Origin: Adineta vaga
Taxonomy: Eukaryota; Animalia; Rotifera
Length of the DNA stretch: 64,000 nucleotides
Assembly (NCBI GenBank): GCA_021613535.1
Contig: CP075496.1
Location: forward strand, 7,564,001 to 7,628,000
Direction of reading: 5' to 3'
Positions 26,134-33,935 of the stretch are shown in pieces. The notes under the pieces are model-generated. The model did not search any database and had not been told where the DNA came from. It worked only from the letters and a program-made list of their open reading frames with translations. The first letter of the stretch is position 1. Each line of letters opens with the position of its first letter. The translations under genes were made by a program, and so were the position numbers.

Positions 26134-29116
26134 TCAAGGTTGTGTAATATCGAACAGAGAACTCAGATGCAAATCAAAATCAGAATTTGTAAAGTTTGTT
26201 ATTGGTGTCCATGAATGGAAAGTAACTGTCAATACGGATTCAAACATATGAAAGCCATTACGTGAAAAATAACCACTCATATGTGCTGATATTTCAAGCC
26301 AAACAAACAGTGCTGGTCGTTTAGCTGTAATTCGAATAACAATATCAGTTGGTGTTACTTGTTGAATATTTTCAACATGAAGATCAGGTTGATAAAGTTG
26401 ATAGGTTTTTGGTGATATTAAAAACAATGTTTGTTCGACTTGATGATGATGATGAGAATCCAATAAACAATGAAGAATACAATGTTGTTGATCATTTGAA
26501 CAACCAGCACGTTTCATTAATGATGCGTAAGATAGATCAATAACATGTTTCATAGTTGTAAAATCGAGAGCAATATCAAATGCCATGGATATTCGAACAG
26601 CAAATGTATCTACTGTATGAATTGAACATATTAATTGACCAGAAATTTCTTTTGGCAGATCATTTATAACATAGAGAGAAATGCGAGCATTTTCATCGGT
26701 GATATTAGCTAAATATGGTGTGAGAATTGCAATAGGGTAAATAGATTCATACATATGTTGAACATAATAATGAGCCATTTTCCATTTCAATCCATATTCA
26801 ATTGTTGACCATGTTGGTGCTTGCCAAATATCATTGATTTGCCAATACATTAAACCCATTGTGTGCCTAAAACGCATATAAAACAGTAGGATGATACTTC
26901 TATATTTTTGTGATAGAAAAACTTACCCTTGACTTGTTTTCGGATCTATCATATCCATCGACGAATGAACTCGACAGACATCACTAATACTTTTCAGCGT
27001 CATTGCTTGATTGATTTGACTTAGATAAATTAATTGTGTAAAGTTTTTCAATGGATCTTTGGTTATTGGTAATGGAAGATTACTCTGAATATGCATCCTA
27101 TGAAGAAGAAAAAACAAATCTTTAATCATAATCCGACATTAATATATTAACAAACATCATTGCATTCAATTGATTTAGAGAGTGTTCTCGATGAAGAAGA
27201 AATGAACTATTGAAATTTAAATCTGATAGATTAGTATTCGCTTGATACCATGCATCTAAACTTGGTAACGATTGAATTCCTGTTTCTGAAAGAAAACGAG
27301 TGATTGGATATGTACGTGGATCCCATGAATCATTACGATAACCATAGAAATGAACATCACCTAAAGTTAAAATATTAATAAAAAAAAAACGATTGAATTA
27401 AATTCTTCTCGATATACCATAAATAGGATCATTTGGATCATTGGCTATATAATCTTCTTTAATCGATTGAAGACCATTACTTGGCGATGAAGTAACAAAC
27501 GGTCGATTATTACCTTTATCAACTTCTGTAACTGCATTCATAATTGTATTGACATATAATTTACGATAATCCTCTTTTACTTTCGGTAATCTTTCTTTTG
27601 GTATATCATACCAGTTTTGTGCAACAGCTGCTTCATTTTCATTATTACCTGCCCAAAGAACGATAGATGCATGTGATTGAAGACGTTTTACTTGATAGAC
27701 AACTTCGTCATGAACATTTCGTAAGAATGATTTATCTACTGGATATCTAATCATAGAAGAATAGAAAACATAAAAATTAATATGAATCTACTTACAAACT
27801 ACAAGCAAACATGAAATCATGCCATAACATAATGCCTAGACGATCTGCTAATTCATAGAATGAATTACGTTCATATATACCACCACCCCAAATACGTAAC
27901 ATATTCATGTTTGCTACTTGAGCAGAACGAAGTAAACGTTCTAATTGATTGTCAGTAACACGTTCTTGAAATGCATCAGCCGGTATCCAATTACTTCCTT
28001 TAATATATATTGGTAGATAATTAATGAGAAAATAAAATGATGATCCGTTAAACATTGGACCATAATCATGTTGAATAAGTTGTACCGTACGAAAACCAAT
28101 AAGACGTGAGTCAATTAATTGTTCTTGATAATAAATTGATAAGGTATATAAATTTTGATCACCATATCCATTTGGCCACCATAAATGAATGTTTTCATCA
28201 GGAATTAATAGGGAGATAGATATCTCATGATCCAATGTGATACTTGTTTCATAAGTAAATGAAGTGTTTTCTAAGATGAATTTTAATCGACATTCGAATG
28301 GATCATTGTGACTGGTTAATAGTACATCAACTTGCCATTTATTAACAGATATCTGATAAGAAGCAATATTAATACTTTCAAGTTGAATGGATATATCAAC
28401 ATCATTGATTCCTTCAAGATATAGATCACCTGGAATACCAATCGGTGCAAAAGCAGGTCCCTGAAAAAAAAAGAAACACATTTTAGAGTCAAATGATCGT
28501 TAAAAAGAGGAGAATGTCAAAATATTCCTACCCAATCCCAACTAAATGAACATGGTTCTTTTCGAATAAATTGTACATGACATTCACCATGTTGAACATC
28601 GGGTGTGCACTCAGGTAGAACACTCTCATTATATATTTTTGCTTGATTTCTTGCATATATCACCGGTGATTCGAAATCTAGACGAAGTTGATTCTTGGAT
28701 TGTAAACATGTACGTATCACATTAAATGTATATGGAACAAACATACTATTCGTCTGACCAAGAAAACATTCATTCAATGTTATATTAGCAACTGTATCGA
28801 TTTGATCGAAATGAAGTGTAAATTGTGTTGAAGTTAGGAAATCGTTTGTTAATGAGAAGTTTTTTGTAAATATCCAAGATGAATAAATGAGAGAGCGGAG
28901 AGTGACATCATTGTAACTCCAATAAGGTTCAGTAATTTGATTTGCAGAAAGAAGAATCGTATGAATACTACCGGGTATTTGACCGCGAGCAGAATATGAT
29001 TTGTCATCTGTGATTGACCAGTCATTTCCAATCAATGAAACACGAATAGAATATGAGAAAGAAAACAAAAGAGAAATAATAGAAACGAAAAATGTACAAG
29101 ATAATAGTTTGAGCAT
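26134..29116 (-). CDS. MANBA: Lysosomal beta-mannosidase (GH2), animal type, with signal peptide
   Basis: Signal peptide [99 protein letters not shown]. Confidence 0.95.
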
Positions 29117-29134
29117 GATTGTTTTTAGAAAGAA

Positions 29135-29800
29135 TTACGAAAGATGACGACGATGTTTTTTGGATTTTTTAGATTTTGATGAATGATGTCGATGTTTATG
29201 ATGACGTTTTCGTTTGGATTTTTTAGATTCCGATTCCGATCCTGAAGAGTCACTGGTACTTGGTGATCGACTAAATTCAAAAAGTACGTGAATTTTTCTA
29301 CATCTAGAAATCCAAATGCTAGCATATACATACTGTCGTTTACGTTTGGATTTTTCGTTTTTCTTCGACTTTATATCTCCTTCTTTCTTTTGTACTTGCT
29401 GCTTTTCACGGTTGATTTCTTCTACAATAAATATACATGTTCTTGTACTGATAACAAATAGTATAAAAGAGAAAGTGAAAAACCAAATTACGTCTAGCAA
29501 GTTGTTGAAGAGGTGTATCGTTGTCGTCGTCACTGGATGGTGAACTAGTTGAACTAACGTCAAGTACAACGGCTTTGGTTGGATTTGCTTGCAAAAAATT
29601 ACGACATTGATAGGTTAAATGTCCAACTAGACATTGAAAATAGAAGAAATCATATGGATCAAAGAATATGAAAGTGTTCCTACCATATCCGCATTTGCCA
29701 CAACCAACTTTATTATCTGGTATTTGTGGACGTGTATAGATACCTGAAAAGAGAATCACTATTAAACATTTCTGAAATACTAATTTAACTTACTGGACAT
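29135..29800 (-). CDS. SREK1IP1: SREK1-interacting protein 1 (CCHC zinc knuckle + Lys/Ser/His-rich tail), 5 exons
   Basis: ATG at 29800 (ATGTCCA|gtaag); [29 protein letters not shown]; basic tail ending KKHRRHLS* at 29135. Confidence 0.88.
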
Positions 29801-29983
29801 AGAAATGAAGCGTTAACGATAAGTATTCACGAAATCTGAAAAACACAAGAAAATTAATCTCTTCCTAATCGAAGAAGAGAATTATGTTAATTGAAGGTTT
29901 TTTTTTGTCAAATAATAAAGCTTGTATGTAAACACAAACAATAACAATACATAGGAAAAAGAACTTTACGAGTTTATTTATAT

Positions 29984-33115: not shown

Positions 33116-33167
33116 TTTTTTAAGCTACTTACAAAAACAAATGATCTGAAATAGTCAAAAAAGAATA

Positions 33168-33830
33168 TCACTGATTATTTATCAACTGTAATTTATTCTG
33201 GATATCTTCAAAATCGTCCCATTCTATAAACGAAATATTTTCTTCAGTTAAATATTTGCATAAACCATCACGTGCAAATACTATATCAGCGTATCTAGCT
33301 GCATTTAAATCAGTAATTGAATCTCCTATAACAATAATCCTTTCTTGATTTTGACATTCGTGTTTAATAACATTCACTTTTGCAACTAATTCACTGCCTG
33401 ATTCCCATTCCGTAATAACTTTTAATTTTTCATTACTTTTATCAATGTCGATGGCGTAAACTTTTGCACAACGTTCTAATAAATTTTCACGTCGAAGAAT
33501 AGTTTCAACTAAACATCGAAGACCACCTGAAACTACAGCAAATGGAATGTTTTCACTATCAAGATAATCAATTAATTTTGGAAGACCAGAACGTATTGGT
33601 AAATCTTGAACAAATTTCAAGAATTCATCGGGATAGACCGAGGATGAAATTGATTCGAGAATTTGACGAACACCTTGTCGTATTGTAATTTCTTTGGAAA
33701 GAATTTTCGGTATTAATTCATTTGACAAGTCAGGAGCAAAATGTTTTAATACACCAACAAATGTTTCACTTGCAGTTATAGTACCATCGAAATCACAAAA
33801 AACGATAGAAGATCGTTTTTCTCTCGACAT
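33168..33830 (-). CDS. Intronless HAD-IB phosphatase (MtnX-like), bacterial/cyanobacterial type
   Basis: 220-aa single-exon ORF with HAD motif I FCDFDGTIT, motif II VVSGG, ELVAK and motif IV IGDSITDL..ADIVFARD. Confidence 0.9.
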   Translation of the reverse strand: MSREKRSSIVFCDFDGTITASETFVGVLKHFAPDLSNELIPKILSKEITIRQGVRQILESISSSVYPDEFLKFVQDLPIRSGLPKLIDYLDSENIPFAVVSGGLRCLVETILRRENLLERCAKVYAIDIDKSNEKLKVITEWESGSELVAKVNVIKHECQNQERIIVIGDSITDLNAARYADIVFARDGLCKYLTEENISFIEWDDFEDIQNKLQLINNQ

Positions 33831-33845
33831 TTTTCTCGTCTTTTA

Positions 33846-33935
33846 TGAAATGAAATAACTAGTTTTTTCAATGGTTCCGTTTTATAATGGATGACAAAAT
33901 TAACCAATCAATGAATTGTTTGAAGATGGCGGTAG
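33846..33935. promoter_or_regulatory. Candidate bidirectional promoter (TATA/Inr on minus strand, CCAAT box, YY1-type motif)
   Basis: Minus-strand TATAAAA at 33886-33880 and TCATTT near 33853; AACCAATCA at 33902-33910; AAGATGGCGG at 33923-33932. Lies between divergent ATGs at 33830 and 34221. Confidence 0.5.

What the first reader, a model, noticed from the sequence alone, without database searches (positions are those of the whole stretch)
26134..33935. Candidate four-gene eukaryotic operon headed by a horizontally acquired gene (HAD > PRPF40A > SREK1IP1 > MANBA)
Seen in sequence: four minus-strand genes have stop-to-start gaps of only 52, 183 and 18 nt. The only promoter-like motifs I could see (TATA/Inr, CCAAT, YY1-type) lie upstream of the first gene. 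A polypyrimidine-AG acceptor (ttttttgactatttcag) ends 22 nt after the HAD stop and 30 nt before the PRPF40A ATG. The PRPF40A-SREK1IP1 gap has AATAAA (29978-29973), a GU-rich tract and then ttgtgtttttcag (AG at 29837-29836). Established: SL trans-splicing occurs in bdelloid rotifers, and it resolves polycistronic pre-mRNAs in nematodes, tunicates and flatworms. Inference: a foreign intronless gene sits between the promoter and an essential splicing-factor gene and is tolerated because downstream cistrons get caps by trans-splicing. Operons or outrons could therefore act as landing pads that give foreign genes immediate expression.
Basis: partly seen in the sequence, partly recalled or inferred. 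Interest (0 to 1): 0.82.

Follow-up and report, generated by a model that had tools for sequence, protein, structure and literature searches.

The report
Foreign gene heads rotifer spliced-leader operon
In a bdelloid rotifer, a phosphatase gene of cyanobacterial type sits between the original promoter of the splicing-factor gene PRPF40A and that gene; RNA data show the foreign message ending exactly where the rotifer spliced leader is joined to PRPF40A, so this looks like a worm- or sea-squirt-style operon that gave a foreign gene ready-made expression.

Summary
The layout is real. Four minus-strand genes (MtnX-like HAD phosphatase, PRPF40A, SREK1IP1, beta-mannosidase) are separated by 53, 187 and 18 nt.

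What the evidence shows:
- HAD is intronless and found across bdelloids. Its nearest non-bdelloid relatives are cyanobacterial, at 50-56% identity.
- Another RNA contig shows the HAD message polyadenylated at 33145, the same spot.
- A duplicated block on another chromosome has PRPF40A-B without HAD. A 23-nt promoter element occurs only twice in the 100.8-Mb genome: upstream of HAD here and directly upstream of PRPF40A-B there.
- HAD>PRPF40A adjacency, with the acceptor at or overlapping the HAD stop, is kept in at least eight bdelloid lineages.

What is not shown:
- No polycistronic precursor was seen.
- No spliced leader was seen on SREK1IP1.
- The 18-nt SREK1IP1-MANBA spacer has no AG. Spliced contigs from three runs cross it, so that junction works differently.

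This scan has noted other spliced-leader operon candidates elsewhere in this genome. The literature I searched reports no rotifer operons.

Verdict: observation confirmed, interpretation partly supported.

The parts
33981..34017 (-). Conserved promoter block CAGCCATT..CATGTCGTGATGGTGTATTCATC upstream of HAD
   Evidence: It is 81% identical to a block directly upstream of the HAD-less ohnolog PRPF40A-B on C1 (local score 39 against shuffles 21.8 +/- 2.9, 0 of 500 reached it). Its 23-nt core occurs exactly twice in the 100.8-Mb genome, at these two places. It is nearly identical in A. ricciae.
33881..33930 (-). Core promoter motifs: GCCATCTT (33930-33923), ATTGATTGG (a CCAAT box on the other strand, 33912-33904) and TATAAA (33886-33881)
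   Evidence: Sequence and motif positions. The motifs lie in the same order as GACATCTTT / ATTGAATGG / AATATATTTAAG upstream of PRPF40A-B and as the A. ricciae sequence. Similar motifs occur in the environmental bdelloid contig L050. Function is inferred.
33168..33830 (-). Intronless MtnX-like HAD-IB phosphatase gene of cyanobacterial type; proposed first cistron
   Evidence: Family: Pfam HAD; NCBIfam TIGR01489 above its cut-off; best solved relative is chain 2fea_A, named MtnX. Origin: bdelloid homologs are 59-83% identical and the next best are cyanobacterial at 50-56%; the bdelloid rows form one clan in the tree. Single copy in G000. Expression: RNA contigs cover 33145-33841.
33146..33167 (-). 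HAD 3'UTR, which is also the polypyrimidine tract and AG spliced-leader acceptor of PRPF40A; the HAD poly(A) site lies at about 33146/33145
   Evidence: An X12 contig carries loose letters CTTGGTAAG at 33147. Their reverse complement, CTTACCAAG, plus the genomic AG equals the last 11 nt of the spliced-leader exon. An X6 contig covering 33813-33145 ends in 14 untemplated A. The acceptor directly after or overlapping the HAD stop is kept in all bdelloid loci read.
29988..33145 (-). PRPF40A-like gene (WW and FF domains), from the trans-splice site to the stop; includes a 15-nt microexon at 32935-32921
   Evidence: Pfam WW, FF and FF_PRPF40A. Twelve or more GT..AG introns are removed in RNA contigs from four runs.
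29832..29949 (-). End of the PRPF40A 3'UTR plus the intercistronic region, with a hairpin at 29880-29858; the most conserved stretch of the locus
   Evidence: 92-97% identical to A. ricciae, against about 80-90% for exons and 40-60% for introns. 85% identical to R. sordida over 138 nt. In the three-species alignment the hairpin stem is invariant and the one variable base lies in the loop; no covariation is available. Folding energy -10.9 kcal/mol, z-score -1.8. The element is unique in the genome. PRPF40A contigs end at 29885, 29886 and 29899.
29836..29848 (-). Candidate spliced-leader acceptor ttgtgtttttcAG for SREK1IP1
   Evidence: Seen in sequence. Invariant in A. vaga, A. ricciae and R. 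sordida apart from two bases. Use of the acceptor was NOT observed: contigs reach only 29806, or about 29817 in run X5 by my arithmetic.
29135..29800 (-). SREK1IP1-like gene (CCHC knuckle, Ser/Lys/His-rich tail), five exons
   Evidence: Weak Pfam zf-CCHC_3. Splice joints 29743|29794, 29626|29684, 29421|29492 and 29270|29334 appear in three runs. Conserved in A. ricciae and R. sordida. Lost from the C1 ohnolog.
29117..29134 (-). 18-nt spacer between the SREK1IP1 stop and the MANBA ATG, with no AG
   Evidence: Sequence. The A. ricciae spacer is 16 nt and also lacks AG. Single spliced contigs in X1, X12 and X5 run unbroken from the SREK1IP1 exons across this spacer. Within the stretch laid they reach 28650 (about 467 nt into MANBA), and by the contig lengths about 570 nt in all.
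26134..29116 (-). GH2 beta-mannosidase (MANBA) gene with a signal peptide; last gene of the cluster; AATAAA at 26106
   Evidence: Pfam Glyco_hydro_2_N2, Glyco_hydro_2, Ig_mannosidase. AATAAA position. Identity to A. ricciae collapses downstream of about 26110.

Best explanation
This is a spliced-leader (SL) operon of a bdelloid rotifer, genus Adineta. Its first cistron is a horizontally acquired, cyanobacterial-type MtnX-like HAD phosphatase.

Proposed mechanism. RNA polymerase II starts at the TATA/CCAAT/GCCAT promoter at about 33860-34017. This was originally the promoter of PRPF40A. Transcription runs through HAD into PRPF40A. The primary transcript's own cap serves HAD. The HAD message is cut and polyadenylated at 33146/33145. 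The 22-23-nt bdelloid spliced leader is trans-spliced onto AG 33147-33146, which gives PRPF40A its cap. HAD therefore occupies what used to be the short outron of PRPF40A.

Shown directly: the SL junction, the poly(A) end, the foreign ancestry, the promoter homology with the HAD-less ohnolog, and the conservation of the layout across bdelloids.

Inferred: co-transcription of HAD and PRPF40A.

Less certain: that the unit extends further. SREK1IP1 probably follows, because a 48-nt, extremely conserved intercistronic region with a hairpin ends in a strong acceptor. MANBA is expressed from RNA that is continuous with SREK1IP1 across an 18-nt, AG-free spacer. That could be a dicistronic mRNA, or an mRNA that starts or is trans-spliced inside SREK1IP1.
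For: 1. SL identity. CTTACCAAGAGGT occurs 54 times in G000, against 2 for the control. The copies are about 100-nt SL RNA genes with the exon ..GCTTATTACAACTTACCAAGAG|GTAAATA.
2. SL junction. An X12 RNA contig (depth 28) runs through PRPF40A exon 1 to 33147 and then carries 9 loose letters that equal the SL 3' end.
3. Poly(A) end. An X6 RNA contig covering 33813-33145 ends in A14 that the genome does not encode.
4. The laid contigs come from RNA. They lack more than 15 introns with GT..AG ends.
5. Ohnolog comparison. C1 carries PRPF40A-B followed by MANBA-B without HAD. The 324-nt region upstream of PRPF40A-B holds the same promoter block and the same order of motifs as the region upstream of HAD. 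The 23-nt core is found only at these two sites in 100.8 Mb. PRPF40A-B has a ctattttAG acceptor just before its ATG, matching ctatttcAG here.
6. No TATAAA and only one GCCAT lie inside the HAD coding sequence.
7. Conservation. HAD>PRPF40A is kept with the acceptor 13-22 nt after the HAD stop, or overlapping it, in A. ricciae, R. sordida and five environmental bdelloid contigs. D. carnosus keeps the adjacency with a spacer of about 210 nt. All four genes are in the same order in A. ricciae and R. sordida.
8. HGT.
Against: - No RNA spanning the HAD-PRPF40A junction (a precursor) was seen. Contigs cannot show transcription starts, so a promoter for PRPF40A inside the HAD coding sequence is not excluded.
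- The SL junction and the poly(A) end each rest on a single contig from a single run, and these are two different runs.
- No SL was seen on SREK1IP1. PRPF40A contigs end at 29885-29899 and SREK1IP1 contigs begin at 29806-29817, so nothing bridges that gap.
- The MANBA junction lacks any acceptor in its spacer, so classical SL resolution cannot apply there.
- In the C1 ohnolog, MANBA-B sits behind a 545-nt spacer that has TATA-like sequences. MANBA can therefore probably have a promoter of its own.
- HAD might instead have been present before the genome duplication and later lost from C1. That would change the history but not the present layout.
Confidence: 0.6

Rival explanations
1. Compact but independent genes. 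PRPF40A is transcribed from its own start site inside the HAD coding sequence, and SREK1IP1 and MANBA from starts inside their upstream neighbours. The SL only trims a short outron, as for the many non-operonic SL genes of nematodes. The tight spacing reflects genome compaction.
For: The cited literature reports the SL on more than 50% of bdelloid mRNAs (PMC1925144), so an SL alone does not prove an operon. No precursor contig was seen. TATA-like hexamers exist inside the cluster, for example at 29982 upstream of SREK1IP1. MANBA-B in the ohnolog has a 545-nt upstream region of its own.
Against: The element that marks the PRPF40A promoter in the ohnolog lies upstream of HAD, not inside it, and occurs nowhere else in the genome. 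No TATAAA lies in the HAD coding sequence. The HAD poly(A) site and the SL acceptor coincide to the base. The acceptor-at-the-stop layout is kept across bdelloid families. TATAAA at 29982 is not conserved in A. ricciae: that stretch is only 68% identical.
Confidence: 0.25
2. HAD is nested in a 5'UTR intron of PRPF40A. The acceptor at 33146 is joined in cis to a non-coding first exon upstream of HAD, with no SL involved.
For: The geometry would allow it: the promoter is upstream of HAD and a strong acceptor lies downstream of it.
Against: The letters joined at 33147 are the SL 3' end, not sequence from upstream of HAD. No joint from the 33840-33900 region to 33146 was listed. HAD RNA is polyadenylated on the same strand at that site.
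Confidence: 0.02
3. History rival. HAD was already in the outron before the bdelloid genome duplication and was cleanly deleted from the C1 copy, rather than being inserted into only one ohnolog afterwards.
For: HAD>PRPF40A is present in Didymodactylos, which branches first among the bdelloid rows of the (midpoint-rooted) tree, so the capture is very old. The C1 block has also lost SREK1IP1, which shows that it loses genes.
Against: No HAD remnant is detectable between the TATA box and the acceptor on C1. A clean loss that keeps both the promoter and the acceptor is the less parsimonious path.
Confidence: 0.3
4. For the last junction only. SREK1IP1-MANBA is a true dicistronic mature mRNA, and MANBA is translated by leaky scanning or reinitiation 18 nt after the SREK1IP1 stop. 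The alternative is a separate MANBA mRNA that starts or is trans-spliced inside SREK1IP1.
For: Spliced contigs in three runs from three studies are colinear from the first SREK1IP1 exon, across the spacer, to about 570 nt into MANBA. The spacer has no AG in A. vaga or A. ricciae. The 154 nt before the MANBA ATG contain no ATG.
Against: A contig across two genes can also arise from overlapping transcripts, as itself warns. The lack of ATG is not significant (P = 0.17). Reinitiation after a 141-codon ORF is usually inefficient (general knowledge). The last-intron acceptor at 29271 or ctcttcAG at 29242 could take an SL, and short SL tips are easily lost from assembled contigs.
Confidence: 0.35

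Closest known systems
Ciona and Oikopleura (tunicate) SL operons
   Same: A single SL type serves operonic and non-operonic genes alike. Intercistronic regions are very short or absent, so the poly(A) site of the upstream gene abuts the trans-splice acceptor of the downstream gene. Here the two coincide at 33146/33145.
   Different: Different phylum and an unrelated SL RNA. The first cistron here is a bacterial-type gene. No precursor RNA has yet been shown.
Caenorhabditis elegans SL2 operons
   Same: Same-strand genes about 50-200 nt apart. The upstream mRNA undergoes 3' end formation, followed by an intercistronic region and an SL acceptor. The PRPF40A-SREK1IP1 spacer (poly(A) end at about 29885, a conserved hairpin, a U-rich tract, AG at 29836) resembles the nematode intercistronic region with its stem-loop/U-rich 'Ur' element. 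That resemblance is from memory and is a lead, not a test.
   Different: Only one SL sequence family was found here: the 29 most common copies share one exon and 5 differ at one base. No operon-specific SL is known. Use of the 29836 acceptor was not observed.
Kinetoplastid polycistronic units with coupled polyadenylation and trans-splicing
   Same: 3' end formation of the upstream mRNA is spatially tied to the downstream SL acceptor and its polypyrimidine tract.
   Different: In kinetoplastids all genes are in long polycistrons without gene-specific pol II promoters. Here a conventional TATA/CCAAT-type promoter heads a short cluster.
Proposal that SL trans-splicing eases functional gene transfer (Matsuo et al. 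2018, PMC6053224)
   Same: That paper suggests SL trans-splicing may facilitate HGT/EGT and names rotifers as an SL-bearing, HGT-rich group. This locus is a concrete instance that fits the idea.
   Different: The paper considers the SL supplying a good 5'UTR to the transferred gene. Here the foreign gene is the non-trans-spliced FIRST cistron, and it is the native downstream gene that the SL rescues.
Other SL operon candidates noted by this scan in the same genome (s1-489498, s1-482656, s1-484586, s1-484634)
   Same: Head-to-tail genes with short spacers and acceptors at the stop. One also has a foreign intronless gene wedged into a native cluster.
   Different: Those are AI notes that I did not check. 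This locus adds an SL junction and a poly(A) end at the same base, plus a promoter comparison with a HAD-less ohnolog.

Membership tests
SL-resolved eukaryotic operon | Two or more same-strand genes with very short spacers | tested here: met
   Spacers of 53, 187 and 18 nt. The layout is kept in other bdelloids.
SL-resolved eukaryotic operon | The downstream gene's mRNA carries the SL at an acceptor in the spacer | tested here: met
   Met for PRPF40A: the SL 3' end is joined at AG 33147-33146 in an X12 contig. Not observed for SREK1IP1. Impossible within the MANBA spacer, which has no AG.
SL-resolved eukaryotic operon | The upstream mRNA is cleaved and polyadenylated just upstream of that acceptor | tested here: met
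   An X6 HAD contig ends at 33145 with an A14 tail. PRPF40A contigs end at 29885-29899, 48-63 nt before AG 29836, but no tail was seen there.
SL-resolved eukaryotic operon | One promoter and one polycistronic precursor | tested here: inconclusive
   There is only indirect support. The PRPF40A-type promoter block lies upstream of HAD. No precursor contig was seen. Contigs cannot show transcription starts.
SL-resolved eukaryotic operon | Linkage is conserved beyond what neighbouring DNA shows | tested here: met
   Gene order is kept in Adineta and Rotaria, and for the first pair in Didymodactylos. The intercistronic region is 92-97% identical between Adineta species.
Horizontally acquired (foreign) gene in an animal | Closest relatives outside the recipient clade are prokaryotic, and far closer than any animal homolog | tested here: met
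   Cyanobacterial proteins are 50-56% identical (E about 1e-60). All named non-bdelloid hits among the best 120 are cyanobacterial. The genome's own next-best match is 24% identical (E = 4.8e-4). Human PSPH scores only E = 5e-5. An exhaustive search restricted to animals was not run.
Horizontally acquired (foreign) gene in an animal | Integrated in the host genome and expressed, not contamination | tested here: met
   It lies 53 nt from an intron-rich animal gene on a chromosome-scale contig. The same linkage is found in independent assemblies. Its RNA is polyadenylated. Its G+C matches the host's.
MtnX-like HAD-IB phosphatase (TIGR01489) | Score above the family cut-off, and the HAD motifs DxDGT and GDSxxD | tested here: met
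   TIGR01489 scores 85.2 bits against a cut-off of 81.55. The score is below the MtnX equivalog cut-offs, so the substrate is not assigned. The motifs FCDFDGTIT and IGDSITD are read from the coding DNA.
Dicistronic mRNA with reinitiation | One mature mRNA carries both ORFs, and the second ORF is translated from it | tested here: inconclusive
   Colinear spliced contigs occur in three runs, but overlapping transcripts are not excluded. Translation cannot be tested with these tools.

The most novel reading that the evidence does not exclude
The HAD message may be a recycled outron. On this reading its 3' end is made by the trans-splicing reaction itself: the outron is released at AG 33146, debranched and then polyadenylated, rather than being cut by a separate cleavage event. 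A foreign ORF that landed in a normally discarded, capped outron would then have become an mRNA at once. If this is general, outrons would be preferred landing pads for bacterial genes in bdelloids and would help explain their unusually high load of expressed foreign genes.
Probability: 0.15. Interest if true: 0.9.

Novelty: new variant of a known kind. Interest (0 to 1): 0.68.

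Why it matters
How a promoter-less bacterial gene becomes expressed after landing in an animal genome is an open question, and bdelloid rotifers are the animals with the most such genes.

This locus offers a testable route. 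Insertion into the outron of a trans-spliced gene gives the newcomer the host promoter and cap. The spliced leader rescues the displaced native gene, which here is a splicing factor.

It also adds base-level RNA evidence for operon-type gene organisation in Rotifera: an SL junction and a poly(A) end at the same position. A 2021 survey states that no operons had been reported in this phylum (PMC7986045).

The extremely conserved intercistronic hairpin and the AG-free 18-nt junction are two further handles on how polycistronic RNA is processed or translated in this group.

Tried and rejected
- The look-up of encoding contigs with the window's own HAD protein found nothing on record.
- Seven short Logan or metagenome contigs carrying bdelloid HAD (L037-L040, L049-L051) were read in the hope that some were transcripts with an SL or a poly(A) tail. 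Those that reach into PRPF40A far enough still carry its introns, or else the contigs carry several hundred bases of upstream flank, and none holds the SL. I therefore used them only for synteny.
- A metagenome scan for the SL joined to the last SREK1IP1 exon tested whether MANBA mRNA is trans-spliced at that internal acceptor.
- Absence of ATG in the 154 nt before the MANBA start is not significant (P = 0.17).
- Stop-codon read-through fusing SREK1IP1 to MANBA is rejected. The stop and the ATG are in frame in A. vaga (21 nt apart) but out of frame in A. ricciae (19 nt apart).
- The conserved intercistronic hairpin is not a general operon signal: it is unique in the genome.
- Rfam gave only sub-threshold matches.
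- The gene upstream of PRPF40A-B on C1 has no counterpart upstream of HAD, so the promoter homology is short and local.
Exons were searched by reference only.
- MANBA below 28650 and raw reads could therefore not be examined.

Full report
**Where the window lies.** The window is G000:C4:7564001-7628000 of a 100.8-Mb assembly in six contigs. G+C is about 31% throughout. The closest proteins are from Adineta ricciae, and the scan's earlier notes call the genome Adineta vaga. I treat it as a bdelloid rotifer of that genus.

**Observation.**
- The minus strand carries four genes:
  - an intronless ORF at 33830-33168;
  - a multi-exon gene from ATG 33114 to TGA 29990-29988;
  - a five-exon gene from ATG 29800 to TAA 29137-29135;
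  - a gene from ATG 29116 to a stop at 26136-26134.
- Pfam names them HAD hydrolase; WW + FF + FF_PRPF40A; a weak CCHC knuckle (SREK1IP1-like); and GH2 beta-mannosidase.
- The spacers are 53, 187 and 18 nt.
- The claim that promoter-like motifs occur only upstream of HAD does not hold. TATAAA, GCCAT and CCAAT also occur inside the cluster.

**RNA evidence.**
- Only one read-laying run was allowed, and all four runs offered were assembled contigs from four different studies.
- The contigs come from spliced RNA: more than 15 introns with GT..AG ends on the minus strand are missing from them.
- Result 1: spliced leader (SL) on PRPF40A.
  - In X12, the PRPF40A contig runs through exon 1 to 33147 and then carries nine letters that do not fit the genome, CTTGGTAAG on the plus strand.
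  - Searching the genome for their complement plus AG and GT found 54 sites, against 2 for the control.
  - These sites are a family of about 100-nt genes, mostly in head-to-head pairs, whose 5' part reads ..GCTTATTACAACTTACCAAGAG|GTAAATA.
  - This is the bdelloid SL RNA. A 23-nt SL on more than half of bdelloid mRNAs is described in the literature cited in PMC1925144.
- Result 2: HAD poly(A) end. In X6, a HAD contig covering 33813-33145 ends in 14 A that the genome does not encode. The HAD mRNA is therefore polyadenylated at the base where the SL is added to PRPF40A.
- Result 3: the SREK1IP1-MANBA junction.
  - In X1, X12 and X5, one contig runs from the first SREK1IP1 exon, through all its splice joints, across the stop and the 18-nt spacer, and into MANBA.
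  - Within the stretch laid, the contig reaches 28650 (about 467 nt into MANBA). By the contig lengths it continues to about 570 nt.
- Gaps in the evidence.
  - PRPF40A contigs end at 29885, 29886 and 29899. SREK1IP1 contigs begin at 29806, or about 29817 in X5 by my arithmetic. Nothing bridges that gap, and no SL was seen at 29836.
  - No contig bridges HAD and PRPF40A.
  - HAD contigs reach 33841 at most, and depth is essentially zero from 33824 to 34220. This fits a start just downstream of the TATA box at 33886.

**Foreign origin of HAD.**
- The word-based protein search found 83% identity in A. ricciae, 74-77% in Rotaria and 59% in Didymodactylos. The next hits are 50-56% identical. Every named protein among them is cyanobacterial, annotated as HAD-IB or 2-hydroxy-3-keto-5-methylthiopentenyl-1-phosphate phosphatase.
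- A tree of the best 120 hits puts all 43 bdelloid-type rows on one side of a branch with 99% support. Didymodactylos branches first (midpoint root). All named cyanobacteria are on the other side.
- NCBIfam places the protein in the MtnX-like HAD-IB subfamily.
- The best solved relative is chain 2fea_A, named MtnX, whereas human phosphoserine phosphatase is barely detectable.
- The genome holds a single HAD copy, and its next-best match is only 24% identical.
- The gene has no introns among neighbours that have 4 to 14.
- I conclude that it was acquired once, before the bdelloid families diverged.
- The tree cannot show nesting within cyanobacteria, so the donor is named only by best hits.

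**The promoter test.**
It does.
- Contig C1 carries an ohnologous block: PRPF40A-B, then a 545-nt spacer without SREK1IP1, then MANBA-B, and no HAD.
- Upstream of PRPF40A-B, 324 nt separate its ATG from a divergent gene.
- That region contains a 37-nt block that is 81% identical to window 34017-33981. It is followed, in the same order, by counterparts of GCCATCTT, ATTGATTGG and the TATA box, and by a ctattttAG acceptor just before the ATG.
- The local alignment beats all 500 dinucleotide shuffles (score 39 against 21.8 +/- 2.9).
- The 23-nt core, allowing two mismatches, occurs exactly twice in the whole genome, at these two places.
- HAD therefore sits in what was a short outron between the PRPF40A promoter and its SL acceptor. 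My estimate from the TATA and acceptor positions is about 80 nt.
- Whether HAD entered one ohnolog after the duplication or was lost from the other remains open.

**Conservation.**
- HAD>PRPF40A is kept in several lineages:
  - A. ricciae: 42-nt spacer, with the AG 16 nt after the stop;
  - R. sordida: 26-nt spacer, with the HAD stop TAG itself supplying the acceptor AG;
  - D. carnosus: a spacer of about 210 nt, with the acceptor directly before the ATG.
- It is also kept in five environmental bdelloid contigs.
- All four genes are in the same order in A. ricciae and R. sordida, although the R. sordida MANBA looks decayed.
- In a sliding comparison with A. ricciae, the most conserved part of the whole 8.4-kb locus is not an exon. 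It is 29949-29832, the end of the PRPF40A 3'UTR plus the spacer up to the 29836 acceptor, at 92-97% identity. This stretch is still 85% identical in Rotaria.
- It contains a hairpin at 29880-29858. In the three-species alignment its stem is invariant and its single variable base lies in the loop.
- The element is unique in the genome and matches no Rfam family.
- I read it as a locus-specific processing or regulatory signal between two splicing-related genes.

**Interpretation.**
- For the first pair, four facts together make co-transcription from the upstream promoter the best explanation:
  - an SL junction and a poly(A) end fall at the same base;
  - the native promoter is stranded upstream of the foreign gene;
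  - there is no TATA box inside HAD;
  - the layout is strictly conserved.
- I put this at about 0.6. A start site hidden inside HAD is the main rival, at about 0.25.
- The cis-spliced nested-gene model is excluded by the SL.
- For SREK1IP1 the operon reading is plausible but unobserved.
- For MANBA, classical SL resolution within the spacer is impossible.
  - The RNA is either dicistronic, or it overlaps with a MANBA transcript that begins or is trans-spliced inside SREK1IP1.
  - Read-through fusion is rejected: the two ORFs are in frame in A. vaga but not in A. ricciae.

**Literature.**
- The SLIDR/SLOPPR paper states that operons and polycistronic mRNAs had not been reported in rotifers (PMC7986045).
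- A 2025 paper lists rotifers loosely among lineages with trans-splicing and operonic transcription but gives no rotifer data that I could find (PMC12460157).
- Searches for bdelloid together with polycistronic or operon found no description.
- Matsuo et al. 2018 already proposed that SL trans-splicing may ease HGT/EGT and named rotifers (PMC6053224).

**Earlier notes of this scan.** The scan's own notes list further SL operon candidates in this genome, one of them with a foreign gene. I did not check them.

**Limits.**
- The SL junction and the poly(A) end each rest on one contig.
- Contigs give neither transcription starts nor expression levels.
- No raw reads were available.

Noticed in passing
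window 29832-29949 (hairpin 29858-29880): The PRPF40A-SREK1IP1 spacer is the most conserved stretch of the locus: 92-97% identical to A. ricciae and 85% to R. sordida, which is higher than the exons. It holds a hairpin whose stem is invariant and whose one variable base lies in the loop. It is unique in the genome and has no Rfam match. Its function is unknown; it may be a 3' end or trans-splice signal, or a regulatory element shared by two splicing-factor genes.
   Followed up: partly
G000 C1:5634000-5652000 (L047, L048): The ohnologous block has PRPF40A-B and MANBA-B but lacks both HAD and SREK1IP1. A decayed 545-nt spacer keeps the homologous 3'UTR and a cttcgttAG|ATTT acceptor.
   Followed up: partly
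G000, e.g. C5:9884354-9925971 and C2:8684671-8691981 (L001-L030): SL RNA genes (54 pattern hits) lie mostly in head-to-head pairs about 168 bp apart, with large clusters on C5 and C2. Five of the 38 copies read carry an A in place of a C in the exon (TTAAAAC for TTACAAC).
   Followed up: partly
window 32921-32935: PRPF40A has a 15-nt microexon (TGAATGGTGGAATGA). It is present in RNA contigs of X12 and X5 and implied in X1.
   Followed up: no
window 30380|30470 vs 30476, and 31309 vs 31312|31368: Alternative splice sites 6 nt and 3 nt apart in PRPF40A differ between runs. A 3-nt deletion at 32526 appears in X12 and X5. These may be strain or allele differences, or alternative splicing.
   Followed up: no
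L034 14540-15713 (Rotaria sordida): Downstream of SREK1IP1 the MANBA homolog matches only in short, low-identity fragments and its reading frame closes soon after the ATG. It looks like a pseudogene in this copy.
   Followed up: no
window 34216-34260: A divergent plus-strand gene starts at ATG 34221 behind an atttttAG acceptor and contains a perfect 18-nt palindrome (GTCGTCGTCGACGACGAC). An X12 contig fits from 34231 upward but continues with 255 letters found nowhere in the window. This is unexplained; it may be a chimeric contig formed at the palindrome.
   Followed up: partly
window 29117-29137: In A. vaga the SREK1IP1 stop and the MANBA ATG are in the same reading frame (TAA plus six codons). 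In A. ricciae they are not (16-nt spacer).
   Followed up: yes
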